The notes below the pieces were generated by a model that saw nothing but the letters and a program-made list of their open reading frames with translations, did no database searches and was not told the origin of the DNA. The position numbers and the translations under genes are program-made. 64,000 nucleotides of DNA from the IMG/VR virus record IMGVR_UViG_3300035181_000357, positions 146,612 through 210,611 of that record; one strand, written 5' to 3'. Shown piece by piece: positions 6,015 through 45,717 of the stretch; position 1 is the first letter of the stretch, and each line of letters starts with the position of its first letter.

Positions 6015-6064
6015 ATGAACTCCATTATCAGAACTTCTTACCTTTATGTTAGTGAGGTAGTTTA

Positions 6065-8434: not shown

Positions 8435-8958
8435 TAGATTTCGGAAATATATGTGAGGGAGATGTTCTCCTATTCAAGAAGAATATTAAATATAAGATAT
8501 CCTTAGTATCCAAGGTTATACGCTTGATACAGGGAAATGAATATGTACATGCCGCTATAGTAGTTTCAGTAGTTCCAGGGCTTACACCGTTAGTAGCTGA
8601 GGTTGATTCTGATTTTAAGTCTAGGGTAGTACCTGTCTCCGTTTCTATGGAACGAGGAACTCCTGATGTTTATAGACTATCTACAACATATACTTTCAGA
8701 TCGAAGTCTGCATACACTTACGCTCTAGACACTGTAGGTCAAAAGTATGGATATTCTAGAATCGTGGATTCTGCTATAAACCACTTCTTAGGGAGATTCG
8801 ATCATGCTTATAATTACAGAGCGTGGTTCTCACCCGATACTAAAGATATCTGTTCTACACTAGTATCTAAGATACTAAATATAGGATTTGGTGCTAAATA
8901 TGATAGATTTAGTGAGCCTGATGACTACTGTAAGTCACCATTTATAAGAATATCCTAG
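8431..8958 (+). CDS. Permuted papain-like NlpC/P60 (YiiX/YebB-like) enzyme
   Basis: GDVLL, YVHAAIV (His), GQKY, ICSTLV (Cys), EPDD. Confidence 0.75.
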   Translation: MIDFGNICEGDVLLFKKNIKYKISLVSKVIRLIQGNEYVHAAIVVSVVPGLTPLVAEVDSDFKSRVVPVSVSMERGTPDVYRLSTTYTFRSKSAYTYALDTVGQKYGYSRIVDSAINHFLGRFDHAYNYRAWFSPDTKDICSTLVSKILNIGFGAKYDRFSEPDDYCKSPFIRIS

Positions 8959-9003
8959 CATAGAACGAGGTCTAGAGTATTACCTTAAAGGGGAAGATAT
9001 ACT

Positions 9004-21883: not shown

Positions 21884-22897
21884 ATGCATGAATATGCGAT
21901 CGTCATCGGAAGATTTCAACCCTTCCATCTGGCCCACAAGCAACTGCTCGAGAAAGCGTTCGAGGTTGCGAGTAGGGTCATAATTATTTTAGGTAGCCAT
22001 GCAGCTGCCCAAACTTCCAAGAATCCCTGGACTAGTCAAGAACGAATCAAGATGATCGAGTCGGCTCTGACACAAGAGCAGAGTGATCGCATTACATTCC
22101 TTCCAGTCCGCGACTATCTTTACAATGAGAATGTCTGGTTGTCTGAAATTCAGCAGAAGGTTAAGGTGGTCACCAACAACTCCAAATCGGTCGTGTTGAT
22201 TGGTCACATGAAGGATGAGTCAAGCAGTTATCTCAAGACTTTCCCTCAGTGGGAATTCATTGAGACCAAGGCCGCTTTTGATCTGTCTGCTACTGATATT
22301 CGCCATTCTCTGTTCACCACTGAAGGATGGGCTGACTCAGCTCAAAAAGTTCCTCAGAAGGTGCAAAACTATCTGGTCAACTGGTGCCGAACTTCGGACT
22401 ATGTTCGCCTGAAGGAAGAGTACACCTACCTCCAGAAGTATAAGGCTTCTTGGGCTGTGGCTCCTTATCCTGTGACCTTCGTGACTGCTGACGCTGTCGT
22501 GATCAAGTCTGGTCACGTCCTAGTGGTCAAGCGTGGTGGAAATCCTGGCAAGGGCTTGATCGCTCTCCCTGGTGGATTCGTAAATCAGAATGAAAGCCTT
22601 GATGTGGCTTGCCTTCGAGAGCTCAAGGAAGAGACCAAGATAAAGGTCAGCATGGATAAGCTGACCTCTGCTCGTCAAACCAACCACGTGTTCGACCACC
22701 CACAGCGTAGTCTCCGTGGTCGTACTATCACTTATGCCTACCTGTTCGACTTGGGTAAAGAGGGAGACCTCCCAACCGTCAAGGGTTCAGATGATGCCGA
22801 GACTGCTTTCTGGATGCCTATTGGAGATGTATATTCCAATGAGGCTACCTTCTTCGAAGATCATCGCGACATCATTCTCTATTTCCTCGGCCGATAG
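21884..22897 (+). CDS. nadM: Bifunctional NMN adenylyltransferase / Nudix ADP-ribose hydrolase
   Basis: GRFQPFHLAH, KNPWT, SATDIR, PGGFV...RELKEET Nudix box, GSDDA, FFEDH. Confidence 0.93.
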   Translation: MHEYAIVIGRFQPFHLAHKQLLEKAFEVASRVIIILGSHAAAQTSKNPWTSQERIKMIESALTQEQSDRITFLPVRDYLYNENVWLSEIQQKVKVVTNNSKSVVLIGHMKDESSSYLKTFPQWEFIETKAAFDLSATDIRHSLFTTEGWADSAQKVPQKVQNYLVNWCRTSDYVRLKEEYTYLQKYKASWAVAPYPVTFVTADAVVIKSGHVLVVKRGGNPGKGLIALPGGFVNQNESLDVACLRELKEETKIKVSMDKLTSARQTNHVFDHPQRSLRGRTITYAYLFDLGKEGDLPTVKGSDDAETAFWMPIGDVYSNEATFFEDHRDIILYFLGR

Positions 22898-22903
22898 GCT
22901 ACC

Positions 22904-23215
22904 ATGAATTCTCACAAACCTACTCCAACCATTTCCTACAAGGACAACTGGTACCATCACGAATACTATGTCGATGGGAAACAACTCAAGGACATTAGAC
23001 GAGTTGAGATCGGAAAAGAATTAAAGTCATTCGTAGTTCCTGTCAACTCGTTCAAGGATGCTGTGACCTATAACGATATGGGTCATGAATATACGTCATA
23101 TTCAACTCAGTTTACCGTGACCATGCGCGACGAGATGCTTCTGATTCCAAACGAAATCCCTCTATCACGTCTTCTCAGTCTTGGCTTCTTCGTCAAACTC
23201 GTTGATGGTGAATAA
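22904..23215 (+). CDS. Hypothetical protein
   Basis: 103 aa; in frame with the nadM TAG stop. Confidence 0.65.
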   Translation: MNSHKPTPTISYKDNWYHHEYYVDGKQLKDIRRVEIGKELKSFVVPVNSFKDAVTYNDMGHEYTSYSTQFTVTMRDEMLLIPNEIPLSRLLSLGFFVKLVDGE

Positions 23216-23237
23216 ACTTTCCTAAAGGAGAAATACC

Positions 23238-24650
23238 ATGTATAATTATAACTTGATACTAGATTCGGATAGTTACAAAATGTCTCACTGGGTACAATAC
23301 CCACATGGAGATAACTTCAAGACCACTTCCATGTTCTCCTATCTGGAGAGTCGTGGTGGTAAATATGATTTCACCCTTTGGTTCGGACTCCAGTATCTCT
23401 TGAAAGAATACTTGTCCCAGCCCATCACGATGGAGATGGTCGAAGAAGCCAAGGAGATCACTGAACTCCACGGTACTCCCTTCAATTATGATGGTTGGAA
23501 GTACATTGTCGAGAAGCTTGGTGGTCGTATTCCTGTTCGTATCCGTGCCGTCCCTGAAGGAACTAAGGTTCCTATCCACAATATCCTGATGTCCGTCGAA
23601 TCCACTGATGGGAATGTGCCATGGATCGCCAGCCATGTGGAAACCATGCTTATGCGTTGTTGGTATCCTACTACTGTAGCCACTCAATCCAAGACCATCA
23701 AGGATCTTATCCTCAGCTATCTCACAAAGACATCAGAAGATCCTCAAGATGAGATCGCTTTCAAGCTTCACGACTTCGGTAGCCGTGGTGTCAGCTCCTT
23801 TGAATCTGCTGGCTGGGGTGGTGCTGCCCATCTGGTAAACTTCATGGGAACTGATACGATTGCTGGTCTTCTCCTAGCTCGTAAGTTCTATCATGAACCT
23901 ATGGCTGGTTACTCTATCCCTGCTGCCGAGCACAGTACTATCACTAGCTGGGGTCGTGAGAACGAAGTCCAAGCATATCGTAACATGCTCAAGCAGTATG
24001 CTAAGCCTGGTGCATTACTGGCTGTGGTCTCTGATTCCTACGATATCTACAACGCTTGTGAGAATCTCTGGGGTGGAGAGCTTCGCCAGGAAGTCATTAA
24101 CTCCGGCGCTACCGTGGTTATCCGCCCTGACTCTGGTCATCCTGCTACTGTGGTTCTCAAGTGCCTCGAGCTTCTCGGTTCAAAATTCGGCTACACCATT
24201 AATTCTAAGAACTACCGCGTACTCAATAACGTTCGTGTTATCCAGGGTGACGGTGTGAATTACGACTCCATCCTGGAGATCTTGGAAGTTGCCACTCAAC
24301 ATGGTTGGTCTGCCACCAACATCGCCTTTGGTATGGGTGGTGCTCTTCTTCAAATCGTCAACCGTGATACTCAGCAGTTCGCCTATAAGTGCAGCAGCAT
24401 GACTCGTACCTACACTGATGGGCACGAAGAGCAGATTGATGTCTACAAGCAGCCTAAGACCGACTCTATGAAGAACTCTAAGCGTGGTCGGCTGGATCTG
24501 ATCTTGACTGAGACTGGGTATCACACTGTCAAACTCCTTCTTGGTGAACAGGCCCATCCTGCCTCTGCAATGCAGACCGTCTATGAAAATGGTGAGATCC
24601 TGGTTGATGACACCTTTGATATTATTCGTGAGAGGTCCAACCATGTCTAG
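23238..24650 (+). CDS. nadV: Nicotinamide phosphoribosyltransferase (NAMPT)
   Basis: DSYKMSH, LHDFGSRG, AAEHS, VVSDSYD, VIRPDSG, IQGDG, FGMGGALLQ. Confidence 0.95.
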   Translation: MYNYNLILDSDSYKMSHWVQYPHGDNFKTTSMFSYLESRGGKYDFTLWFGLQYLLKEYLSQPITMEMVEEAKEITELHGTPFNYDGWKYIVEKLGGRIPVRIRAVPEGTKVPIHNILMSVESTDGNVPWIASHVETMLMRCWYPTTVATQSKTIKDLILSYLTKTSEDPQDEIAFKLHDFGSRGVSSFESAGWGGAAHLVNFMGTDTIAGLLLARKFYHEPMAGYSIPAAEHSTITSWGRENEVQAYRNMLKQYAKPGALLAVVSDSYDIYNACENLWGGELRQEVINSGATVVIRPDSGHPATVVLKCLELLGSKFGYTINSKNYRVLNNVRVIQGDGVNYDSILEILEVATQHGWSATNIAFGMGGALLQIVNRDTQQFAYKCSSMTRTYTDGHEEQIDVYKQPKTDSMKNSKRGRLDLILTETGYHTVKLLLGEQAHPASAMQTVYENGEILVDDTFDIIRERSNHV

Positions 24651-25548
24651 TTGGAATAAGATCGAGATCAAAGAATCGTCTGAGGGTAATGTCTGGAAGT
24701 TTGTATTCACCAAGGACGATGCCATTGTTGAGGCAGTTCTTTATCGCTATGAGTCATTTGAAGAGAGAACTGTCATTTGTTTTTCTGTTCAATCGGGTTG
24801 TCCCGTTGGTTGTAAATTCTGTGGAACCGGGGGTCACTATGTAAGAAATCTAACAGCAAACGAAATTGCATCCCAAGTTTGGCACATCATCCGTCTAATG
24901 AAGATTGACCCATTTAAGGTCAAAAAATTTCAATTGATGGGAATGTCGATGGGTGAGCCGATGCTCAATTGGGAGAATCTAAAGGAAGCAATTACCCTCC
25001 TAAAAGAGTTCGGATACACTCATGCTCAATACCTAATCAGCACAGTAGGTATCGCAGATCTCGATACATTCAATGACATCATCGGATTTTCTAGAGAGAA
25101 TCCCCAGATCGGTCTTCAATTCTCTATCCACAAGTCTACAGATGAACAGCGAAATAGACTTATTCCATACAAGAATAAGCTGACCTTATATGAACTCATG
25201 GTAGCTGGTGTCAACTGGCATTCTGCAACAGGACGTCCAGTATATCTCAACTATTGTATCGATGGTACCAATAACACAGAAGATGATTTCAATAACTTGA
25301 GGGGTATGTTCAATCCTGAAGTATTTAATTTGACATTTTCTGTGATCTGTGCTAAGAATGAATCTATCAAAGATGCGGCATATCGTAATCTCGATGTCAT
25401 CAATGCTTTCAGTCAGAAATTCCTGGAAGATGGATACAACGTCCGTGTCTTCAATCCAGCAGGTCAGGACGACATCGGTGGTGGATGTGGCCAGTTATTC
25501 GCTGTTCAGAACTGGTTCGAAAATCATAAACACCGTGGGGAGGTTTGA
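24643..25548 (+). CDS. RlmN/Cfr-family radical SAM RNA methyltransferase
   Basis: ICFSVQSGCPVGCKFC, MGMSMGEP, ISTVG, QFSIH, DIGGGCGQL (both catalytic Cys positions). Confidence 0.85.
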   Translation: MSSWNKIEIKESSEGNVWKFVFTKDDAIVEAVLYRYESFEERTVICFSVQSGCPVGCKFCGTGGHYVRNLTANEIASQVWHIIRLMKIDPFKVKKFQLMGMSMGEPMLNWENLKEAITLLKEFGYTHAQYLISTVGIADLDTFNDIIGFSRENPQIGLQFSIHKSTDEQRNRLIPYKNKLTLYELMVAGVNWHSATGRPVYLNYCIDGTNNTEDDFNNLRGMFNPEVFNLTFSVICAKNESIKDAAYRNLDVINAFSQKFLEDGYNVRVFNPAGQDDIGGGCGQLFAVQNWFENHKHRGEV

Positions 25549-25579
25549 GTATAACCTAGTTAGTTCCCAGGAGATATCC

Positions 25580-26227
25580 TTGTCAAAAAATGATGAACCT
25601 ATCCTAATCCCTATCTCCATGGAAAAAGACGAAGAGACATGTAGAGAAGTCTTGTGTAAGTATACTCCCACTATCTACGTCCGTGGTGAGTTTAATGATG
25701 AGATGGTTGAGTCGTTTAGAAAAGCGGTCAACACTATTAAGTATGAACGAAATATTGACATCGCTACCGTAGATATCAGTAGCCCAGGTGGTTCAGTTCT
25801 GTCTCTGTTCGAGATGCTTGGAACCATGCAACAGTCTGGGTTAAAGTATCTCACATACTGTAGTGGACAAGCAGCATCCTGTGCAGCGATCTTGTTATCG
25901 GCTGGTGAACCAGGACAACGATGGATTTCACCGATGGGATCTACCATGATCCATGGTGTTAGTAATTTCTTGGGATATGCACCGTTTGAAGAGCATGTAG
26001 TAGAACAGGAATTTATTGCAAAGACTAACGAGAAGTTGATGCACCTGTTAGCTAAAAATTGTAAGATGCCGTATAAGGGTTTGATGAAGAAGATCAAGGA
26101 TTCTGGTGCTCGTTCTCTATGGCTACTGGCCGAGGATACACTACAACTTGGTCTCGTAGATAAGATCGGGTATCCTGTCGTCATCAAAGAAAATCAGTAC
26201 GCAGTAAAGAATGCTTTAGATAAGTAA
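25580..26227 (+). CDS. clpP: ClpP-like serine protease
   Basis: SSPGGSV, AASCAA (Ser), MIHG (His), WLLAEDTLQLGLVDKI. TTG start after CAGGAG inferred. Confidence 0.8.
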   Translation: MSKNDEPILIPISMEKDEETCREVLCKYTPTIYVRGEFNDEMVESFRKAVNTIKYERNIDIATVDISSPGGSVLSLFEMLGTMQQSGLKYLTYCSGQAASCAAILLSAGEPGQRWISPMGSTMIHGVSNFLGYAPFEEHVVEQEFIAKTNEKLMHLLAKNCKMPYKGLMKKIKDSGARSLWLLAEDTLQLGLVDKIGYPVVIKENQYAVKNALDK

Positions 26228-26302: not shown

Positions 26303-27823
26303 ATGAGATTCATAAACGAATACACCCAGAAATCAGCTAATACCCCAGAGATCAAGGTCTTCACTGATAAGAGCACATATCACAAGCTAGCGAAAGTAGC
26401 TTTGACTGGTGTACTAAACGGTCAGTACTACAAATCTGAGGACAAGATAGTCAGTGAACTAACTTCTGTAGTTGAGAAGATGGCAATCGAAGATCCTATC
26501 TTCTTGCTAAAGGCAGCTAAGGCTAGCCGTGCCCTCAACATGAAGTTGTTCCCTAAGCTAGCTGTCGCTGCTGTCCTATCGAAGTCACAGGACAAGTCTG
26601 TAGATCCAGAGATCGAAAAGATTCTGGCTACCTACAACCCAAACCAGCTTTTAGAGTTCATCTTGATGTTGAAGAACCGTCAGTATGGTTCTGGCCTGGG
26701 GTCTAGATCACAGAAGCTCGTCGCTCGTGGACTAGCTCGTGTCTCAGCTAAGCGTCTAGAGGATTGGACTCTGTCCGAAGGTTCTAGCCTTAACAGAATC
26801 CTACGTCTCGTTCACCCAACACTTAATCCAGTCGTCAAGTACGTCCTGAAGGCTGATAAGGAAGCAGAGTGGACTGATCGTCAGCGTGCACTCGAGACCA
26901 TCAAGATGCTTCAGCAGAAGAGAGAAGGGGATTACGAGGCTGAGGTAGCAGCATTAATCAAAGTCTACAATCTTCCATTCAATTCTTTGAAGGGTGTAAT
27001 CTCAGCTACCAACAAAGCTGCCTGGGACGAGATCGCAGAGAACATGTCTGTGATCCAGCTCCTAATCAACCTCAAGTCCCTTGACAATATGGGTGTGATG
27101 ACCACTTCTAGACTTCGTCGTCTTCTAGATGCCAAGTTTGTAAAGGGCAAGACCAGGATTCTTCCTTTTGACATCATGCGGCCAATGGCTAATGCAGATG
27201 CTAAGTACAGGGATGTCTTGATCGAGTTCTTGGAGAAGCTAGTCCTAGATCCTATTCCATCCCTTGAGGGTAAGACCGTCGGTCTAATCTTTGACGGTAG
27301 TGGATCAATGGGTGGTCCTAACTATGCTGGTAGCCCATGGATGACTTCTATGGCCTTGGGTCTGCCTCTTATGTCCAGCTGTAATGTAGCTGAGTCCATC
27401 ATCTATTCTACCACTGTCCGAAAGGCTCCAGAGTTCAGAAAGTATGATGGTGCAGAGAACTTCAAGCGTATCTCCGAGGCATTCCCATCTGGTGGAACCA
27501 ACACCGATATGGCGATTGACCACTTCACCAAGAACAACATCGTTGTTGATGTTCTTGTTCTCATCACTGATGAGCAGCAGAACGGCTACAGGTGTGGTGG
27601 ATTCCAGAACGCCTGGGCAAGATACAGAAAGCTTCACCCAGAAGCAGAACTACTTATCGTAAACGCTACTCCATATGAGTGGCACATGACAGAGACTGGA
27701 ACCAATGGTGTCACCATCGTCCAGACTCTGACCCCAGCTGTTTACCAGATGATCCAGTACCAGGGTCAGGATATGGTAGACGTCATTTCCAACATGGAAC
27801 TAGGAGACAGCAATGAAGATTAA
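26303..27823 (+). CDS. TROVE/Ro60-family RNA-binding protein with vWA domain
   Basis: Helical TROVE region (DPIFLLK, GLGSRSQK, LRLVHP) plus MIDAS DGSGSM, GGTNT, ITDEQ. Confidence 0.85.
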   Translation: MRFINEYTQKSANTPEIKVFTDKSTYHKLAKVALTGVLNGQYYKSEDKIVSELTSVVEKMAIEDPIFLLKAAKASRALNMKLFPKLAVAAVLSKSQDKSVDPEIEKILATYNPNQLLEFILMLKNRQYGSGLGSRSQKLVARGLARVSAKRLEDWTLSEGSSLNRILRLVHPTLNPVVKYVLKADKEAEWTDRQRALETIKMLQQKREGDYEAEVAALIKVYNLPFNSLKGVISATNKAAWDEIAENMSVIQLLINLKSLDNMGVMTTSRLRRLLDAKFVKGKTRILPFDIMRPMANADAKYRDVLIEFLEKLVLDPIPSLEGKTVGLIFDGSGSMGGPNYAGSPWMTSMALGLPLMSSCNVAESIIYSTTVRKAPEFRKYDGAENFKRISEAFPSGGTNTDMAIDHFTKNNIVVDVLVLITDEQQNGYRCGGFQNAWARYRKLHPEAELLIVNATPYEWHMTETGTNGVTIVQTLTPAVYQMIQYQGQDMVDVISNMELGDSNED

Positions 27824-33380: not shown

Positions 33381-33635
33381 ATGTTCCATGGAAGTACCAG
33401 GAGTGATTTTGCTCTGAGTATGATTCAGGCTCGAGAGATGAACGTGGATCCTGAGATCATGCGATTGCTCGAAGATTTCGAAGCTGCGTACGAACGAGCT
33501 TTCAAGTTTGCGATCGAACTCAAGAAACATAAGAATTTTGAAGACATCGGTGAACTACTCCGGCTTGAACTTTTCGGAGACAAAGAAGCTATCGATGATC
33601 TCTATAAAGAAATCAAAAACCGAAAGAGGGTGTAG
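33381..33635 (+). CDS. Hypothetical protein
   Basis: 84 aa, GAGG SD. Confidence 0.6.
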   Translation: MFHGSTRSDFALSMIQAREMNVDPEIMRLLEDFEAAYERAFKFAIELKKHKNFEDIGELLRLELFGDKEAIDDLYKEIKNRKRV

Positions 33636-33636
33636 T

Positions 33637-34131
33637 TTGAAGAAGTCGCATAAGGTCATCATCCTGGCTGGTATCCCTGGTTCTGGAAAATCCACCTATA
33701 TTGAAGGTCTGATGAAGACTTTCAGTGAAGACATCTCGGTATCTATCGTGTCTGCCGATCACTATTTCATCAAGTACGGTACGTACAAGTATGTGGCACA
33801 TGATATCCCACATGCTCACAAGCAGTGTCAGAACAGGTTCTCTGACGCTCTGGACATGGACGTTGACGTTATCTTTGTAGACAACACCAACATCCTGAGT
33901 AAGCATCGCAAGCCATACGTCCAGGAGGCTCTGGATTGTGGCTATGAGGTTGAGATTCATGCTCTTCCTGCAGATGTCGAGGCTAGTGCAAGTAGGAACA
34001 TTCACGGTGTGGACCTGGATGTCTGTCAGCGAATGTTCGATTCTTTCGATCTGGAGTTTGGAACTATCTACGACCATAAGCGTCAGAAGATTGGGACTAT
34101 CACCAAGGAACAGGTAGGCTTGAGTGGCTAA
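33637..34131 (+). CDS. P-loop polynucleotide-kinase-like protein (AAA_33 type)
   Basis: GIPGSGKST, VSADHYF, VDNTN, RNIHGV. TTG start inferred. Confidence 0.8.
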   Translation: MKKSHKVIILAGIPGSGKSTYIEGLMKTFSEDISVSIVSADHYFIKYGTYKYVAHDIPHAHKQCQNRFSDALDMDVDVIFVDNTNILSKHRKPYVQEALDCGYEVEIHALPADVEASASRNIHGVDLDVCQRMFDSFDLEFGTIYDHKRQKIGTITKEQVGLSG

Positions 34132-34519
34132 ACAGCTATCATGTGGTGTCCTGGTTACACACAAGAATTCACTTCTTCTATGTCATGTAACTGGGACTTA
34201 CAATCGTTGGGATATTCCTAAAGGAATGCCTAATGATGGAGAAGATCACGTAGCTGCTGCTGTTCGAGAACTCAACGAAGAAACAGGGATTGTACTCGGT
34301 GTTAACTACAGAGAGTTGGGTTACACCGAGTACACCAAGACGAAGGATTTGTTCCTTCTCTACCATGAAGGTCTGTACGAAGTATCGGATATGACCTGTT
34401 TGTCGTTCTTTGAAGATGATCGTCCAGAGATGGATGGTTTTAGGTATTTTGATTTTAATGAAATTGTTGGCCACGTCACACCTAATCTGTATAAGGTATT
34501 GACTAAGTTCTTAGGGTGA
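34124..34519 (+). CDS. Nudix hydrolase
   Basis: WDIPKG-x5-E-x7-RELNEETGI. Confidence 0.9.
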   Translation: MAKQLSCGVLVTHKNSLLLCHVTGTYNRWDIPKGMPNDGEDHVAAAVRELNEETGIVLGVNYRELGYTEYTKTKDLFLLYHEGLYEVSDMTCLSFFEDDRPEMDGFRYFDFNEIVGHVTPNLYKVLTKFLG

Positions 34520-34522
34520 GTT

Positions 34523-35614
34523 ATGGAAAGAAAGCTAGTAACTATTAGAGAGATCGCTGCAGTGAATCCTATCCCCGATGCAGATGCCATCGAGGTGGTA
34601 ACTGTAGATGGATGGAAAGTGGTCTCCAAGAAAAATGAGTTCAAGCCAGGAGATCTCTGCCTATACTTCGAGATCGACAGCTTCCTACCTATCAAGCCAG
34701 AGTATGAGTTTCTGCGTAAGAGTAGCTACAAGAAGGTCATCGATGGTACGGAAGGATTCAGACTCAAGACCGTAAAACTGCGTGGTCAGATCAGCCAAGG
34801 TCTGGTTATGCCTATCTCAGAAGATATTCTGAAGACTCTGGCTCCAGTAGCTAGTTCGGATCTCAGGACTCTTCTGGACCAAGATCTCACCGAGTTGTTT
34901 GGTGTGACCAAGTGGGAGCCACCTCTGTCTGCCTGTCTTTCTGGGTTGGTTAAGGGTAACTTCCCATCACATACTCCGAAGTCTGGCCAGGAGCGTATCC
35001 AGAATCTGAAATACTTCTTCGAACTCTATAAAGATGAAGAGTTCGAGATGAGTCTGAAACTCGATGGAAGTTCATGCACTATGTATTTGGATCGAGAGGA
35101 TGTCTTTGGAGTCTGTTCACGTAATCTGGATCTGAAACCAGACGAGAGCAATAGCTTCTGGAAACAAGCCTATATTCATGGTGTTGAAGACAGACTCAAG
35201 ATAATTCATTCTGTATCTGGGTTGAATCTCAGTATCCAAGCTGAATTGGTTGGGGAAGGAATTCAGGAGAACCACGAGAAGATCAAGGGCCAAGATCTGT
35301 ATGTCTTCAATATCTGGGACCAACACCTCGGACGATCCTTGACCCCATCTGAACGACATGCTACACTGGATGCTCTAAACGATCTCCAGGTCTTAGGTTC
35401 CAAGCCACTTAAACATGTCCCTGTAATTGGGTATGAGAAGGTCTTCACCAAGTATCAGACACTAGAAGCTCTCTTTGAATTCGTGGAAAGCCTAGCTGGG
35501 ATGAATCCTGGTGTAATCCTCGAAGGCGTAGTGTTCAAGAGTGTAAGACCTATAAATGGTAGCATTGTAAGCTTTAAGATCGTCAGCAATAAGTACCTTC
35601 TTTCCAAGAAATAA
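34523..35614 (+). CDS. RNA ligase, Rnl2-like (DRB0094 type) with N-terminal OB domain
   Basis: IPDADAIE N-terminus, KLDGSS (motif I), CSRN, QAELVG, FNI, EGVVFK, FKIVSNKYLL. Confidence 0.88.
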   Translation: MERKLVTIREIAAVNPIPDADAIEVVTVDGWKVVSKKNEFKPGDLCLYFEIDSFLPIKPEYEFLRKSSYKKVIDGTEGFRLKTVKLRGQISQGLVMPISEDILKTLAPVASSDLRTLLDQDLTELFGVTKWEPPLSACLSGLVKGNFPSHTPKSGQERIQNLKYFFELYKDEEFEMSLKLDGSSCTMYLDREDVFGVCSRNLDLKPDESNSFWKQAYIHGVEDRLKIIHSVSGLNLSIQAELVGEGIQENHEKIKGQDLYVFNIWDQHLGRSLTPSERHATLDALNDLQVLGSKPLKHVPVIGYEKVFTKYQTLEALFEFVESLAGMNPGVILEGVVFKSVRPINGSIVSFKIVSNKYLLSKK

Positions 35615-35985: not shown

Positions 35986-36101
35986 GATCCCATAGCTCAG
36001 TTGGACAGAGCAACAGCCTTATCGCACTCCTGACCAGGTGGGTTTGGAACTGCATGGCTCTAAGCTGTAGGTCGCTGGTTCGAGCCCAGCTGGGATCACC
36101 A
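35986..36101 (+). tRNA. tRNA (probably Arg-UCU) with 39-nt insert in anticodon loop
   Basis: All four stems and CCA intact; removing 36021-36059 gives loop CT-TCT-AA; A20 present. Confidence 0.8.
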
Positions 36102-37832: not shown

Positions 37833-38170
37833 GGGCCTGACAAGGTTTCGACAGGTTGTTAGCTTGGGATTGCGGTGCAGGGACTGGTTGATCAGCAGGC
37901 CAGTATAAAAGCAGATCAAACTTTAATTGCCGAGCCACAGCTCGCACTAGCAGCTTAAACACTGCTACGAGGAACCGCGAGAGGACAGTAGCGGGGAATC
38001 GTCACCACCGTCCTAGTTTCTACTAAGAGTTCGGGTAAGTAGGAGCGAAACTACGCGATCAAACGATAGTAGGCTGTCAGTCGCCGACCTATCGAGACCA
38101 GACTGACTAACCCTGTGAATGACTTCAATACAACTCTTCTTGGACGTGGGTTCGAATCCCACCAGGTCCA
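37833..38170 (+). ncRNA. ssrA: tmRNA, tag AEPQLALAA
   Basis: GGGCCTG..GGTTTCGAC 5' end, T arm, G3.U70 pair, tag ORF 37929-37958; CCA not encoded. Confidence 0.93.
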
Positions 38171-38676
38171 CATCGGTAGACTTCCTAGTTCTTACGGAGA
38201 ATAGGAACATGGAAGTCTACCATACAACCCTCTAAGATAATGGATGGACAAGAGGTAGGAAATTCCCTAGCGATAGGGATTAAGATCGGCGAGTGCCGAT
38301 ATACGGAGGTAGTTATGGCTACTGAACCAGAGGACAACGACGGTCTACTCGGGACCGAGCGTGAATCAGATGAAGAAGGTTGTCCAGATTATGACAAGGA
38401 CGACGACGAGTAACACTGTACCATAATACCGGGGATGGGGACGACAGGCCCATACAAAGCAGATCCATAGTGTAAAAACTATGGGTGATGAAAGTCTGCC
38501 ATGTCAGTTGATTCTCTAGACTGACAAACCTTAAGTTGGATGCAAACGGAAGACGACTCGCCATCGACCCCAGGCACATGGGGAACCACGGCCTTTCCCA
38601 GATAGCGTAGTGGCCCTACGACGATGCGTGGAAGGTGGGATTATTCCCTTAAAAGCACTGTGTCATCCAACTACTT
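38171..38676 (+). ncRNA. Structured non-coding block E
   Basis: Many helices, including long-range GTTGGATG/CATCCAAC. Confidence 0.55.
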
Positions 38677-39274: not shown

Positions 39275-39467
39275 AAGTCGTCGCTCGCAAAGCGGAGAGA
39301 GGTAAGTAAGACAGATTAATGGTCTAGAACATCCTGTCAGAGAATACCTTGTAGGTTCAAATCCTACCTTGACAACAATACGCAACGCCATAGAAAAGCC
39401 TTCATCTTAATAGGGATGGGGGGGAAACCCTCGCTGGCTTTTCACCACTTTCGTTGCATTCTTATTA

Positions 39468-39692: not shown

Positions 39693-40049
39693 ATGTTCAA
39701 AGCTAAACTACTAAAGACTGCATCAAGTCCACAATTGACTCTGGCTCAACAAGTCTATGCTCAACATAAGGCAGAGATAGATCCTAAGATTTTCAAGGCT
39801 GCTGACTATGTAGTTGATAATGCTATCGATCTAGATTCTGAAACTGCAGATAATCATCTATTTGGTGATGCTATATTTGAGCCATGGTTTGAAGCCAGCC
39901 CAGAATATCTCAGTATGACAGAAGAATCTGGGAACGAAGATGACGAGACCGATTATATTGGTGGTGTCTGGGAACAAGTTCTGTCTACAAATCCAAAGTA
40001 TAAAGATGTCGTAGCTAAATTTGCTGACATCAGAATCAATGGATATTAA
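39693..40049 (+). CDS. Acidic hypothetical protein starting MFKAKLLKTAS, inserted in the tRNA array
   Basis: AGAGG SD and late-type motif upstream. Confidence 0.75.
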   Translation: MFKAKLLKTASSPQLTLAQQVYAQHKAEIDPKIFKAADYVVDNAIDLDSETADNHLFGDAIFEPWFEASPEYLSMTEESGNEDDETDYIGGVWEQVLSTNPKYKDVVAKFADIRINGY

Positions 40050-40134: not shown

Positions 40135-40254
40135 TTCTCTCTAGAAATAGAGGATCATGAGTTGGGTAGAATCCACGTCTGAGGGACGTTAGGTGTCTGC
40201 TGTGCTGCAGCGAGAAACCCCACTAGCAGACCCTGTCTCATGATCAAATATCAT

Positions 40255-40331
40255 GCTCCGTATGCTGAAGTTGTCGAGGCGTTGGTCTGCAAAACCAATC
40301 TTAGCCAGTTCAAGTCTGGCACGGAGCTCCA
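40255..40331 (+). tRNA. tRNA-Cys(GCA)
   Basis: TTGGT-CTGCAAA-ACCAA, U73, CCA. Confidence 0.93.
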
Positions 40332-40360
40332 AATTCGTAATGCCCTTTAGAAGCTTTCAT

Positions 40361-40453
40361 CCACTATAAGGACGTTATCGGAGGTTCGAATCCTCCTCCC
40401 GGAACCAATATCTTATTTTTCATTCCGGGATAGCTTAGTGGCCTAAAGCACGT
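40361..40453 (+). ncRNA. Circularly permuted tRNA-like gene (3' half before 5' half)
   Basis: T arm, TCCCGGA-A-CCA, 16-nt linker, TCCGGGA, D arm, CGT. Confidence 0.75.
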
Positions 40454-40493
40454 AAAAGAGCTTTTTTACTATTTTCATTGCGAAGCCTATTAT

Positions 40494-40579
40494 GGTCCAG
40501 GAGTCCAACGGTTGAGACAGCACGCTGTTAACGTGCCGCTGTAAAAGCACATAGGGTTCAACTCCCTACTGGATCGCCA
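40494..40579 (+). tRNA. tRNA-Asn(GUU) with long variable arm
   Basis: GCACG-CTGTTAA-CGTGC, V-arm GCT-GTAAA-AGC, G73. Confidence 0.85.
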
Positions 40580-40799: not shown

Positions 40800-40891
40800 C
40801 CCGGTGTGATGTACGGTTGCATAGGTGGCTTTATACCCCACTCGCGCCAGATTAGCGCCTTGTTAGGGTTCGACTCCCTACGCCGGGACCA
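40800..40891 (+). tRNA. Atypical class II tRNA, anticodon ambiguous (UUA possible)
   Basis: Acceptor, D, V and T arms and CCA present; anticodon arm GGTGG-CTTTATACC-CCACT. Confidence 0.6.
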
Positions 40892-40969
40892 ATTCTTGAT
40901 AACGCCTTCGAATCAGGTTTCATCCATTAAATGAAAAGCCTGTTCATCCTGTTCTTCGTTATCATCCAC

Positions 40970-41978: not shown

Positions 41979-42977
41979 ATGTCCCATGATAATTATGTCG
42001 TAAAGGTTGGAAACGATTATGTAGAAAGAAGTGCCTTTGTAATCGCTGATTCTACAGATCCTCTTGCTGTTGCTCGTGTTACTAACACTGCTCCTGGAGC
42101 TAGTGATTATGGCGTAGTAGTCAGAATGATCGGTACTGTCTCTGTCACTGGTGGTGGCGGTGGTGCTGTCTATGGACCTTCGTCCCTAGGTGTGGTATTA
42201 TCAAATCCTCCAGTAGCAATTGGTGGAGTTGATGCTGGAGGCTTGTTAAGAGTTATCAGGACTGACGCTGCTGGATATGGGCTAAACATGATTACCAATG
42301 GTACGCAGTTCATGCCCACCATGGATGCTGCGGCTCGTCGTGGTTACATGACTCACACAGATGGTACGAACTCCATGCCAACTGGTGATGCTGTTGCTCG
42401 TGGTATTTATCATCGTATTACGGATGGTGTTACACAAGTGGCCGTTAAAGCAGCTTCGACTGCTGCTGTCGCTGCTGATCCTGCCTTGGTAGTAGCGCTG
42501 TCTCCAAACAATAACACTGCTGCCCTAGCCTGGTTTGAGAAGATCACTGATGGAACAAATACTGCAGCTGTTAAAGCTTCTACTACTGTAGCTGCTATTA
42601 CTGATCCTGCCTTGGTTACGACTCTGAGTCCTAACCTTCCTGTTCCAACGATGAGCACTATCTCATCTGCTGCGACAACGAATGCTACATCTGTTAAAGC
42701 ATCTGCTGGAACCGTATTCAATATCGTATGTTCTAATACTGGTGCTGCTGCTGCGTATGTCAAGTTCTACAACAAGGCTTCTGCTCCTACAGTCGGTACA
42801 GATGTTCCTGTATTTACATTGACCATTCCAGCTTCTGGCTCAGTAATAATCCCTGCATCGTTGATTGGTATTAGATTTGCTACTGGTATTGCTCTGGCAA
42901 TTACCAATTTAGCAGCTGATTCTGATACAACGGCTGTAGTCTTAAATCAAGTCAAAGTAATGACATCCTATATTTAA
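41979..42977 (+). CDS. Ala/Thr-rich repeat protein, probable fibre/decoration protein, inside the tRNA array
   Basis: Repeats ITDG..AVKA(A/S)T..A..DPALV..LSPN and MPT.DA.AR.G. Confidence 0.7.
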   Translation: MSHDNYVVKVGNDYVERSAFVIADSTDPLAVARVTNTAPGASDYGVVVRMIGTVSVTGGGGGAVYGPSSLGVVLSNPPVAIGGVDAGGLLRVIRTDAAGYGLNMITNGTQFMPTMDAAARRGYMTHTDGTNSMPTGDAVARGIYHRITDGVTQVAVKAASTAAVAADPALVVALSPNNNTAALAWFEKITDGTNTAAVKASTTVAAITDPALVTTLSPNLPVPTMSTISSAATTNATSVKASAGTVFNIVCSNTGAAAAYVKFYNKASAPTVGTDVPVFTLTIPASGSVIIPASLIGIRFATGIALAITNLAADSDTTAVVLNQVKVMTSYI

Positions 42978-45641: not shown

Positions 45642-45717
45642 GGTTCCGAAGCTCAATGGTAGAGCAAGGAGTCTCTAAAACTTCTGGCTGTGGATTCGAA
45701 TTCCACCGGAATCACCA
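45642..45717 (+). tRNA. Amber suppressor tRNA (CUA)
   Basis: AGGAGT-CTCTAAA-ACTTCT, normal D and T loops, A73-CCA. Confidence 0.88.

What the first reader, a model, noticed from the sequence alone, without database searches (positions are those of the whole stretch)
40361..40453. Circularly permuted tRNA-like gene: candidate Y-RNA-like partner of the phage Ro60, or a ligation substrate
Seen: the order is anticodon loop (CC-ACTATAA-GGACG, 40361-40374), T arm (GGAGG-TTCGAAT-CCTCC), acceptor 3' strand TCCCGGA-A-CCA (40397-40407), a 16-nt linker, the exactly complementary acceptor 5' strand TCCGGGA (40424-40430), a D arm (GCTT-AGTGGCCTA-AAGC), then CGT. Joining CGT to CC rebuilds a 5-bp anticodon stem CGTCC/GGACG with a UAU anticodon (A32/C33 are atypical). 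Known: permuted tRNA genes occur in some algae and archaea; bacterial YrlA Y RNAs are tRNA mimics with the T arm before a loop-closed acceptor stem and D arm, and bind Ro60. A TROVE/Ro60 gene lies at 26303-27823. Inference: either a Ro60-binding Y-RNA-like RNA, or a permuted tRNA-Ile(UAU) precursor matured by the phage kinase/ligase.
Basis: partly seen in the sequence, partly recalled or inferred. Interest (0 to 1): 0.87.

Follow-up and report, generated by a model that had tools for sequence, protein, structure and literature searches.

The report
Jumbo-phage Y RNA with tRNA mimic
The "permuted tRNA" is real. It is the tRNA-shaped top of a ~150-nt small RNA that belongs to a previously uncatalogued family found beside a divergent Ro60 gene in related giant phages, so it is most likely the Ro60 partner (Y) RNA and not a tRNA gene awaiting ligation.

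Summary
Window 40361-40453 holds anticodon-like loop, T arm, acceptor 3' strand plus ACCA, a 16-nt linker, the acceptor 5' strand, and a D arm. When the two halves are joined, ARAGORN calls them tRNA-Ile(UAU).

The element is larger than reported, spanning 40334-40484. Its ends pair into a two-part stem (9 bp, then 7 bp) carrying conserved motifs: AAYGCC, UUCAUC, and a U-rich run before CGUU or CAUU.

About 20 to 30 RNAs share this scaffold:
- Two or three paralogues lie in the same tRNA array (39382-39457, 40899-40962).
- In six sister phages, members lie 0.07-2.2 kb from the same divergent Ro60 clade.

An orthologue sits in a 336-kb phage whose Ro60 is only 30% identical. It keeps the same permuted layout, with 14 of 35 base pairs changed on both sides and none broken in the T, acceptor or D stems.

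Rfam's YrlA model matches only the tRNA-like module (25.9 bits, cut-off 69). Genuine phage YrlAs next to Ro60 also score only 31-45 bits.

Best reading: a YrlA-type Y RNA of a new scaffold family, cut out of the tRNA array by tRNA-processing enzymes. The idea of a permuted tRNA-Ile precursor is disfavoured but not excluded. Ro60 binding is inferred, not shown.

The parts
40332..40493 (+). Whole interval between tRNA-Cys (ends 40331 with CCA) and tRNA-Asn (starts 40494). This is the predicted primary processed RNA, called 'YA' here.
   Evidence: It is 100% identical in five assemblies.
40334..40342 (+). Outer stem, 5' strand UUCGUAAUG. It carries the family motif AAYG followed by CC.
   Evidence: Pairs with 40476-40484 in the MFE and constrained folds, pair probability 0.74-1.0. 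Family covariation is shown.
40476..40484 (+). Outer stem, 3' strand CAUUGCGAA, preceded by the U-rich internal loop 40466-40475.
40349..40355 (+). Middle stem, 5' strand AGAAGCU.
   Evidence: Pairs with 40459-40465 (AGCUUUU) in the constrained fold. In the family table, each member's own strands give 7.58 contiguous pairs on average, against 1.56 for strands taken from different members.
40459..40465 (+). Middle stem, 3' strand AGCUUUU.
40356..40361 (+). UUCAUC, the motif conserved across the family.
   Evidence: Present in all 19 members tabulated.
40360..40372 (+). Hairpin 1: UCC / 7-nt loop ACUAUAA / GGA. It stacks on the inner stem.
   Evidence: The 21-nt stretch CUUUCAUCCAYUAUAAGGACG is nearly identical in L069. 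The hairpin forms in the L069 MFE fold.
40372..40375 (+). Inner stem, 5' strand ACGU. It pairs with 40450-40453.
   Evidence: Rfam YrlA alignment, model positions 23-26 with 82-85.
40380..40396 (+). T arm: GGAGG UUCGAAU CCUCC.
   Evidence: Three of 5 pairs are compensated relative to L069.
40397..40430 (+). Closed acceptor stem: UCCCGGA, a loop beginning ACCA and continuing with 16 nt, then UCCGGGA.
   Evidence: Five of 7 pairs are compensated relative to L069. Thirty-eight of 40 tRNAs in the window also encode CCA.
40431..40449 (+). U8-A9, then the D arm GCUU AGUGGCCUA AAGC (A14, G15, G18, G19 present).
   Evidence: G15 can pair with C48 (40379).
40450..40453 (+). Inner stem, 3' strand ACGU.
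39382..39457 (+). Paralogue 'YB': same scaffold, with two small hairpins as cargo. It lies between tRNA-Ser(gct) and tRNA-Pro.
   Evidence: 58.8 bits. The orthologue is L047 17321-17398.
40899..40962 (+). Paralogue 'YC': same scaffold with minimal cargo. It lies between tRNA-Ile(tat) and tRNA-Gln.
   Evidence: (57.2 bits)
26303..27823 (+). Divergent Ro60/TROVE gene, the presumed protein partner.
33508..35614 (+). P-loop kinase (AAA_33, polynucleotide-kinase-like), NUDIX and RNA ligase genes lying between Ro60 and the tRNA array.

Best explanation
The element is the tRNA-like (YrlA-type) member of a family of Y-like small RNAs that partner a divergent Ro60 in uncultivated jumbo phages.

Proposed steps, each marked shown or inferred:
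1. It is transcribed with the tRNA array. tRNA 3'-end maturation of tRNA-Cys (40331) and RNase P cleavage at tRNA-Asn (40494) release it as a ~150-160-nt RNA. (Inferred.)
2. Its ends pair into a bipartite stem, outer 40334-42/40476-84 and middle 40349-55/40459-65. An asymmetric internal loop and the motifs AAYGCC, UUCAUC and a U-rich run before CGUU/CAUU lie on this stem. This scaffold is the part shared by the whole family and is the presumed Ro60-binding platform. (The fold and its conservation are shown; binding is inferred.)
3. The apex folds like a tRNA opened at position 29/30. It has a short inner stem, a mini anticodon-like hairpin, a T arm, a 7-bp acceptor closed by a loop, and a D arm carrying the nucleotides for tRNA tertiary contacts. 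(Structure shown by covariation.)
4. This copy has U(-1), a 7-bp acceptor and an encoded ACCA, so RNase P probably also nicks it at 40423/40424. That would give a two-piece RNA with a tRNA-like 3' end, as reported for M. smegmatis YrlA. (Inferred.)
5. The complex would tether Ro60 to tRNA-handling or RNA-decay and repair enzymes during infection. (Speculative.)
For: - Topology: Rfam YrlA aligns 40372-40455 to model positions 23-87, covering inner stem, T arm, closed acceptor and D arm. Genuine phage YrlAs beside Ro60 genes score only 31-45 bits against the same model.
- Constrained fold: when the tRNA-like module is enforced, the flanks fold into the outer and middle stems plus hairpin 1 at -38.5 kcal/mol, against an MFE of -40.9.
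- Conserved flank: the 5' flank is 86% identical to an inter-tRNA RNA in L047, whose Ro60 is 76% identical.
- Family: 19 members share the o5-AACG-C(G)C...UUCAUC...UUU-CGUU-o3 architecture with 18 different middle stems, each matched by its own partner strand.
- Outer-stem covariation: 25 double-change cells against 8.0+-2.2 in shuffles, 0 of 500 shuffles reaching the observed value.
- Genomic association: members lie 66 nt upstream of Ro60 in L062, and 0.75-2.2 kb downstream on the same strand in L065, L008, L009, L010 and L011.
- Specificity: covariance model R1 gave 17 hits in 524 kb, all in loci of this Ro60 clade, and none in tRNA arrays of phages without it (L057/L060, L059, L033, L042-L046). 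A strict scaffold pattern matched only two IMG/VR contigs, both carrying Ro60.
- Orthologue: L069:2409-2564(-) keeps the permuted module, with 14 of 35 pairs changed on both sides and 95.7% of cells paired. Slid controls gave 2 or fewer.
- Protein: the ORF is Ro60 by profile search, with a DxSxS...T...D MIDAS pattern conserved.
- Literature: phage Ro60 proteins with Y RNAs are documented (PMC4201824, PMC12135203). [quoted passage not shown]
Against: - No binding or expression data exist.
- The element lies 12.5 kb from Ro60, not beside it.
- It scores below the Rfam YrlA cut-off (25.9 against 69) and lacks the GNCGAAN0-1G / CGAA motif used to define bacterial Y RNAs. The scaffold consensus is different.
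- One Ro60-bearing relative (L002/L003, 52% identity) shows no scaffold hit in 31 kb.
- Many members sit in tRNA arrays 12-75 kb from Ro60 (window, L047, L069, L075), so the association could partly reflect shared ancestry of the genomes.
Confidence: 0.72

Rival explanations
1. Permuted tRNA gene. The scaffold stem brings positions 29 and 30 together. An endonuclease removes the scaffold, and the phage kinase and ligase seal CGU to CC. RNase P and 3' trimming then open the acceptor loop, giving a functional tRNA-Ile(UAU).
For: - The joined halves are called tRNA-Ile(tat).
- ACCA is encoded, as in 38 of 40 phage tRNAs.
- U(-1) and a 7-bp acceptor make a good RNase P site.
- The anticodon-like loop is conserved and is canonical (AUUAUAA, U33) in L069. 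A second L069 element has a CUGUUAA loop.
- RNA ligase and a P-loop kinase are encoded 5-7 kb upstream.
Against: - The same scaffold encloses cargoes with no tRNA features (YB, YC, L065, L008, L011 members).
- The L069 orthologue has an 8-bp acceptor, no CCA and a structured closing hairpin.
- The window copy has C33.
- Canonical tRNA-Ile(UAU) is already present at 40800-40891.
- No bulge-helix-bulge motif was seen at the junction on inspection.
- I know of no such pathway in bacteria or phages.
Confidence: 0.07
2. A structured RNA family of jumbo-phage tRNA arrays that is unrelated to Ro60. It could be processing punctuation, or the partner of another protein (RNA ligase, RlaP, kinase), or a decoy for host tRNA-targeting nucleases that acts without Ro60.
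For: - Members are interleaved with tRNAs in the window, L047, L069, L073, L075, L008 and L065.
- They often start directly at a tRNA 3' end.
- Some lie 30-75 kb from Ro60.
- L002/L003 has Ro60 but no hit.
Against: - L062 has a member 66 nt upstream of Ro60 on a contig with no tRNA genes.
- In all six sister-clade loci the members lie within 2.2 kb of Ro60 on the same strand.
- tRNA arrays of phages without this Ro60 gave no hits.
- The architecture (paired ends, conserved internal loop, optional tRNA-like module) is that of Y RNAs (PMC4201824).
Confidence: 0.16
3. Decayed remnant of a tandem tRNA duplication, or a tRNA-dimer false positive of the YrlA model, with no function.
For: - It sits in a dense tRNA array.
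- Chen et al. warn that tRNA dimers mimic YrlA hits (PMC4201824).
- L043 shows such a false positive.
Against: - Neither half belongs to a complete tRNA.
- There is no close parent tRNA.
- The acceptor pairs 7/7 Watson-Crick, and no neighbouring tRNA pair reaches that.
- The orthologue shows 14 compensated pairs.
Confidence: 0.02

Closest known systems
YrlA (Rfam RF02553), the tRNA-like Y RNA of Salmonella, M. smegmatis and mycobacteriophages (Chen et al. 2014, PMC4201824)
   Same: - The 5' and 3' ends pair into a long stem.
- The apex runs in the order T arm, loop-closed acceptor stem, D arm, with tRNA tertiary nucleotides.
- It is encoded in genomes that have Ro60, with a shorter paralogue lacking the module (YrlB corresponds to YB/YC).
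- The M. smegmatis YrlA has a 7-bp acceptor and is cut by RNase P and given CCA.
   Different: - The scaffold sequence motifs differ: AACGC(G)C...UUCAUC...UUUCGUU here, GNCGAAN0-1G in YrlA.
- The score is below the Rfam cut-off.
- There is an extra anticodon-like mini-hairpin, so the whole cloverleaf is present.
- ACCA is genomically encoded.
- The RNA is embedded in a tRNA array 12.5 kb from Ro60 and not beside it.
D. radiodurans Yrn1 and Thermus phage phiLo Yrl1/Yrl2 (PMC4201824, PMC12135203)
   Same: - They are Ro60-bound RNAs with a stem, an internal loop and a stem.
- Phage-encoded examples exist that bind a phage Ro60.
- In Yrn1 the Ro-binding stem sits where the acceptor would be, as in the family member L069:2208-2325.
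   Different: The phiLo RNAs are defined by a CGAA motif and sit directly upstream of Ro60. No full tRNA-like module is described for them.
Circularly permuted tRNA genes of Cyanidioschyzon merolae and other algae or archaea (from my own knowledge)
   Same: The 3' half is encoded upstream of the 5' half, a linker joins the acceptor ends, and the two halves rebuild a cloverleaf.
   Different: Those genes are matured through a bulge-helix-bulge motif and a circular intermediate into working tRNAs. Here no such motif is seen, the scaffold is shared with non-tRNA cargoes, and the orthologue lacks CCA.
Two-piece (permuted) tmRNA of alpha-proteobacteria and cyanobacteria (from my own knowledge)
   Same: It is a bacterial precedent for a permuted tRNA-like domain whose acceptor is opened by processing to give a two-piece RNA.
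   Different: tmRNA is aminoacylated and acts in trans-translation. The window has its own one-piece tmRNA at 37833-38173.

Membership tests
YrlA / bacterial Y RNA (RF02553) | Reaches the Rfam gathering score (69 bits) | tested here: not met
   25.9 bits, model positions 23-87 only. Phage YrlAs lying beside Ro60 in L007, L014, L017 and L046 also score only 31-45 bits.
YrlA / bacterial Y RNA (RF02553) | Topology: stem, T arm, loop-closed acceptor, D arm, stem | tested here: met
   Rfam alignment, descriptor scan, constrained fold, covariation with L069.
YrlA / bacterial Y RNA (RF02553) | tRNA tertiary-contact nucleotides (U8, A14, R15-Y48, G18G19, T-loop UUCRA) | tested here: met
   Read directly from the sequence: U40431, A40437, G40438 with C40379, GG 40440-41, UUCGAAU 40385-91. 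The same nucleotides are present in L069.
YrlA / bacterial Y RNA (RF02553) | GNCGAAN0-1G (CGAA) motif near the 5' end | tested here: not met
   The window has UUCGUAAUG. The family consensus is NNNAACGC(G)C.
YrlA / bacterial Y RNA (RF02553) | Encoded next to a Ro60 gene | tested here: inconclusive
   This copy is 12.5 kb downstream on the same strand. Scaffold relatives lie 0.07-2.2 kb from Ro60 in six sister loci.
YrlA / bacterial Y RNA (RF02553) | Binds Ro60 | not testable with these tools
   Needs RIP or EMSA.
Permuted tRNA gene | 3' half upstream of 5' half, and the halves rebuild a cloverleaf | tested here: met
   ARAGORN calls the joined halves tRNA-Ile(tat), 77 nt.
Permuted tRNA gene | Canonical anticodon loop (U33, purine 37) | tested here: not met
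   The window loop is ACUAUAA, with C33. L069 has AUUAUAA, with U33.
Permuted tRNA gene | Processing signal at the junction (bulge-helix-bulge) and a ligated mature tRNA | tested here: inconclusive
   No 3-nt/4-bp/3-nt motif was seen on inspection of the fold. The mature species cannot be tested here.
Canonical tRNA (RF00005 / ARAGORN) | Detected in genomic order | tested here: not met
   No call at 40332-40493.
Ro60 / TROVE protein (ORF 26303-27823) | Sequence relation to solved Ro60 proteins over the full length, and a vWA domain with a MIDAS DxSxS...T...D pattern | tested here: met
   The profile of 9 homologues hits 2nvo at E=3e-23 (residues 15-491), 9kop at 1e-23 and 1yvp at 6e-20. D331, S333, S335, T399 and D423 are invariant. 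The AF2 model is helical for the N-terminal two-thirds and alpha/beta at the C terminus. Pfam TROVE is not matched by the single sequence.

The most novel reading that the evidence does not exclude
The RNA is a Ro60-held full tRNA mimic that displays a specific anticodon loop: UAU here and in L069, GUU in a second L069 copy beside tRNA-Asn. It would serve as a decoy or damage sensor for host anticodon nucleases, with cleavage or repair of the mimic coupling Ro60 to the phage kinase-ligase tRNA-repair genes. A more radical variant is that the scaffold directs excision and ligation, so that the phage makes working tRNAs from permuted genes.
Probability: 0.1. Interest if true: 0.85.

Novelty: new variant of a known kind. 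Interest (0 to 1): 0.62.

Why it matters
Tools report a tRNA count for giant phages, but ARAGORN and Rfam at its curated cut-offs called nothing in the inter-tRNA spacers examined here. The scaffold had no match in Rfam 15 in the two regions scanned at a permissive threshold.

These results define a Y-like RNA family with a scaffold motif different from the bacterial CGAA type. Its members are produced from tRNA arrays, and their cargoes range from nothing to a complete tRNA cloverleaf.

This gives a compact, sequence-defined system for asking what the tRNA-like domain of Y RNAs is for, which Chen et al. (PMC4201824) left open. The system has one Ro60, three or four RNAs that share a stem and differ in cargo, and neighbouring kinase, ligase and tmRNA genes.

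It also shows that tRNA detectors can mislabel such RNAs. ARAGORN calls L069:2232-2306 a tRNA-Ile although it is embedded in the scaffold.

Tried and rejected
- GenBank phages: DNA similarity found nothing related. tblastn with the Ro60 found only 24%-identical actinophage Ro-like proteins.
- Exact and degenerate patterns for the element or its 5' scaffold found only the source contig in IMG/VR. In JGI metagenome contigs they gave three chance hits in coding DNA.
- Neighbouring ORF 39693-40049 has no homologues apart from identical copies.
- ORF 41979-42977 led to loci without tRNA arrays in IMG/VR. Through P0012 it led to a related phage (L057/L060) whose syntenic array lacks YA and YB and shows no Ro60 in 33.9 kb.
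- The closest relative, L047 (Ro60 76% identical), ends about 850 nt before the element's syntenic position.
- The UCAUC motifs in the L007/L013 Y RNAs looked related at first, but they sit on the 3' strand of a different family with a GGGUUACUUCG motif.
- L033 and L042 are another YrlA-like pair with GCCA in the acceptor loop, but no Ro60 was seen in their loci. L043 is a tRNA plus group-I-intron false positive.
- The resemblance of UUCGUAAUGC to the Rfam consensus CGAAUGC was dropped once the family consensus AACGC(G)C was known.
- The 20-mer TTTCATCCAYTATAAGGACG in 596 Gb of genomes gave 2 hits, about the number expected by chance.
- The P0008 scan of IMG/VR found nothing.

Full report
**Source and setting**

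The window is the last 64 kb of IMGVR_UViG_3300035181_000357, a 210,611-bp uncultivated jumbo-phage contig. Window coordinates equal contig coordinates minus 146,611.

The finding lies in a + strand array of 40 ARAGORN tRNAs and a tmRNA, with three further tRNAs found only by Rfam. It sits in the 162-nt gap between tRNA-Cys (40255-40331) and tRNA-Asn (40494-40579).

**Observation**

- In genomic order, no tRNA detector calls the element.
- When 40424-40453 is joined to 40361-40407, ARAGORN calls a 77-nt tRNA-Ile(tat) with an encoded ACCA and an atypical C33.
- The two acceptor strands pair 7/7 Watson-Crick. Among the 39 neighbouring tRNA pairs of the array, none reaches 7/7 even when G-U is allowed.
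- The best match of the joined sequence to any tRNA in the window is 71%. That is within the background among those tRNAs (median 58%, maximum 77%), so it is not a recent duplicate.
- The interval is identical in five independent assemblies from different samples, which excludes an assembly artefact.

**The protein**

ORF 26303-27823 has no Pfam TROVE hit and only a weak vWA_Ro60 hit (E=0.0019). Other evidence identifies it as a divergent Ro60:
- Its homologues carry PF25045 or PF05731.
- It matches PHROG 850, annotated 'RNA-binding protein', at E=6e-20.
- A profile of nine homologues hits D. radiodurans Rsr (2nvo, E=3e-23, nearly full length), Thermus phage phiLo Ro60 (9kop/9l5y, 1e-23) and vertebrate Ro60 (9nen at 3.6e-21 and 1yvp at 6e-20).
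- The MIDAS-type residues D331, S333, S335, T399 and D423 are invariant.
- The AF2 model (pLDDT 79) is helical and then alpha/beta, as expected for Ro60.

A fold comparison could not be run.

**What the element is**

Rfam's YrlA model aligns 40372-40455 to its positions 23-87. This covers a 4-bp inner stem (ACGU/ACGU), the T arm, the loop-closed acceptor and the D arm. The score is 25.9 bits against a cut-off of 69.

The cut-off is not decisive for phages. YrlA-like RNAs lying directly beside Ro60 genes in L007, L014, L017 and L046 score only 31-45 bits, and mostly on the same module.

Chen et al. (PMC4201824) note that tRNA dimers can mimic YrlA hits. L043 is such a case, a tRNA followed by an intron-containing tRNA. 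The window element is not, for the reasons given under Observation.

**The scaffold in the flanks**

When the tRNA-like module is enforced, the rest of the interval folds as follows:
- outer stem UUCGUAAUG (40334-42) with CAUUGCGAA (40476-84)
- middle stem AGAAGCU (40349-55) with AGCUUUU (40459-65)
- a small hairpin, CC / ACUAUAA / GG

This fold has -38.5 kcal/mol, against an unconstrained MFE of -40.9.

The 5' flank is 86% identical to an inter-tRNA sequence in L047. L047 is a 17.5-kb contig whose Ro60 is 76% identical and whose tRNA array is syntenic. It ends about 850 nt short of the element's position.

The same flank is paralogous to window 39382-39457 ('YB') and 40899-40962 ('YC').

**The scaffold family and its link to Ro60**

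Searching the loci that carry relatives of this Ro60 showed the same scaffold repeatedly. Its consensus is:

5'-NNN-AACG-C(G)C-N4-6-[stem]-(U/C)UUCAUC-[cargo]-[stem']-A/U-rich-UUU-CGUU-N'N'N'-3'

Positions relative to Ro60, all on the Ro60 strand:

| Locus | Position of members relative to Ro60 |
|---|---|
| L062 | 66 nt upstream (contig has no tRNA genes) |
| L065 | 1.1-1.5 kb downstream (three copies) |
| L008 | 1.0-1.6 kb downstream |
| L009 | 1.1-1.5 kb downstream |
| L010 | 0.75-0.94 kb downstream |
| L011 | 1.6-2.2 kb downstream |

Support for the family:
- A covariance model built from six short members (R1) gave 17 hits in 524 kb. All were in loci of this Ro60 clade. None were in loci of more distant Ro60 genes or in tRNA arrays of other phages.
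- A strict scaffold pattern occurs in IMG/VR only in two contigs that carry this Ro60.
- Across 16 aligned members, the outer stem is 90.6% paired with 25 double-sided changes, against 8.0+-2.2 in shuffles (0 of 500 shuffles reached it; slid controls 5 or fewer).
- In an anchor-based table of 19 members there are 18 different middle-stem sequences. Each is complementary to its own partner: 7.58 contiguous pairs on average, against 1.56 when partners are swapped.
- MFE folds of individual members reproduce the two stems.
- Rfam showed no family for the scaffold in the two regions scanned.

Cargoes vary: one or two small hairpins, a T arm plus hairpins, or full tRNA-like modules.

**An orthologue of the finding**

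L069:2409-2564 (- strand) lies in the 336-kb contig that also holds L008. That contig's Ro60 is 30% identical to the window's. The element is in a tRNA array about 30-40 kb from that Ro60.

It has the same order of parts:
- scaffold and UUUCAUC
- CC / AUUAUAA / GG, then ACG
- T arm
- closed acceptor
- UA, then D arm
- CGU and scaffold

Against the window copy, 14 of 35 pairs differ on both sides while staying paired (per-helix detail also):

| Helix | Pairs changed on both sides |
|---|---|
| T arm | 3 of 5 |
| Acceptor | 5 of 7 |
| D arm | 1 of 4 |
| Outer stem | 4 of 9 |
| Middle stem | 1 of 7 |

Overall 95.7% of cells are paired, and slid controls give at most 2. The orthologue's own MFE fold gives the whole architecture with z=-4.56.

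The tRNA-like fold is therefore under selection and is not a decayed remnant.

Two differences bear on the interpretation. The L069 acceptor has 8 bp and is closed by a structured 24-nt loop with no CCA. Its anticodon-like loop has U33, where the window has C33. The 21 nt CUUUCAUCCAYUAUAAGGACG are almost invariant between the two.

Further permuted-type members exist at L069:1743-1888 (loop CUGUUAA, just upstream of tRNA-Asn GUU) and at L073:9115-9243 and 8831-8964. L069:2208-2325 carries a normal-order D arm, anticodon arm and T arm, with the scaffold in place of the acceptor. That is the arrangement described for D. radiodurans Yrn1, and ARAGORN labels it tRNA-Ile(tat).

**Mechanism**

Shown:
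- the fold
- its conservation
- the family
- the genomic association with one Ro60 clade

Inferred:
- The RNA is released from the polycistronic array by the enzymes that mature its tRNA neighbours. In L069 and L008, members start directly at a tRNA 3' end.
- The shared scaffold is the Ro60-binding platform. This is by analogy with Y RNAs, in which Ro60 binds the stem formed by the RNA ends (PMC4201824, PMC12135203).
- The window copy has U(-1), a 7-bp acceptor and ACCA, so RNase P probably nicks it at 40423/40424. That would give a two-piece RNA, as shown for M. smegmatis YrlA (PMC4201824).

Speculative: the complex links Ro60 to tRNA-handling, decay or repair enzymes. Relevant neighbours are a P-loop kinase (33508-34131), NUDIX, an RNA ligase (34523-35614) and a tmRNA. 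A review of jumbo phages notes that some carry TROVE proteins expected to act with a tRNA-like partner (PMC7824862).

**Rivals**

- Permuted tRNA precursor, about 0.07. It is attractive because the cloverleaf is complete and the anticodon-like loop is conserved. Against it: the scaffold is shared with non-tRNA cargoes, the orthologue lacks CCA, the window has C33, and a canonical tRNA-Ile(UAU) exists at 40800-40891.
- Scaffold unrelated to Ro60, about 0.16. Many members sit far from Ro60 in tRNA arrays, and the L002/L003 phage (Ro60 52% identical) shows no hit. The consistent adjacency in six loci and the tRNA-free L062 context argue the other way.
- Pseudogene or artefact, about 0.02. Covariation contradicts it.

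**Comparison with known systems and novelty**

Y RNAs that mimic tRNA are known in bacteria and phages, including jumbo phages (PMC4201824, PMC12135203). The kind of element is therefore known.

What differs here:
- a different scaffold motif, which fails the GNCGAA/CGAA criterion and the Rfam cut-off
- production from tRNA arrays, with several paralogues per genome
- a module that retains the whole cloverleaf, including an anticodon-like hairpin and, in this phage, an encoded ACCA

I rate it a new variant of a known kind, of moderate to good interest.

**Limits**

- There are no expression or binding data.
- Comparative sampling is small, about 10 genomes, all of them metagenomic.
- The relative closest to the window could not be read at the syntenic site.
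- The Ro60 status of some member-bearing contigs (L072, L073, L080) is unknown.

Noticed in passing
window 39382-39457 and 40899-40962 (possibly also 48255-48345): There are two clear paralogues of the scaffold, YB and YC, with minimal cargo in other tRNA spacers. A degenerate fourth candidate follows tRNA-Arg(cct); R1 did not hit it.
   Followed up: partly
window ~40140-40250; L057 ~5925-6030: Another conserved ~110-nt non-coding element lies between tRNA-Asp and tRNA-Cys. Its ends pair, with compensatory changes between the two phages (GAUCAUGAG/CUCAUGAUC against GAUCACUAG/CUAGUGAUU). No Rfam family reaches its curated cut-off there.
   Followed up: no
window 37833-38173: A phage-encoded one-piece tmRNA has the tag AEPQLALAA (Rfam 93 bits). 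The L047 relative has AEPKLALAA.
   Followed up: no
window 45642-45717; L003 17630-17703: A tRNA with anticodon CUA (an amber suppressor, labelled 'Pyl' by ARAGORN) is conserved in a relative. This may indicate stop-codon recoding in these phages.
   Followed up: no
window 35986-36098, 40800-40891; L003 16439-16532; L060 ~5410-5520: Some tRNAs are unusually long. One is a 113-nt Rfam tRNA hit with an internal insertion. tRNA-Ile(UAU) has a ~20-nt extra arm that is conserved in a relative.
   Followed up: no
L069:2208-2325 (- strand): The 'tRNA-Ile(tat)' called by ARAGORN at 2232-2306 is embedded in the Y-like scaffold. It has a D arm, an anticodon arm and a T arm, and the scaffold stem takes the place of the acceptor. 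It may not be a working tRNA.
   Followed up: partly
L013 5350-6750; L014 7040-7260; L015 11640-12050: Distant phage Ro60 genes are flanked by tandem arrays of three to six or more Y RNAs of a different family (GGGUUACUUCG ... UCAUCUUCG), several of them with YrlA-type modules.
   Followed up: partly
L033 8860-8990; L042 4950-5090 (- strand): A pair of homologous YrlA-like RNAs have 7/7 acceptors and GCCA in the closing loop, with covarying stems (GUAAAAAA/UUUUUUAC against UGCAGUA/UACUGCA). No Ro60 gene was found in the fetched loci.
   Followed up: partly
window 21884-26227: Genes directly upstream of Ro60 are an NMN adenylyltransferase-NUDIX fusion, NAMPT (NAD salvage), a radical-SAM protein and a ClpP-like protease. 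ClpP next to Ro60 is conserved in L002.
   Followed up: no
L003 12200-15000: The relative with a 52%-identical Ro60 has more than 2 kb of non-coding sequence around its few tRNAs and no scaffold hit. It may hold other structured RNAs.
   Followed up: no
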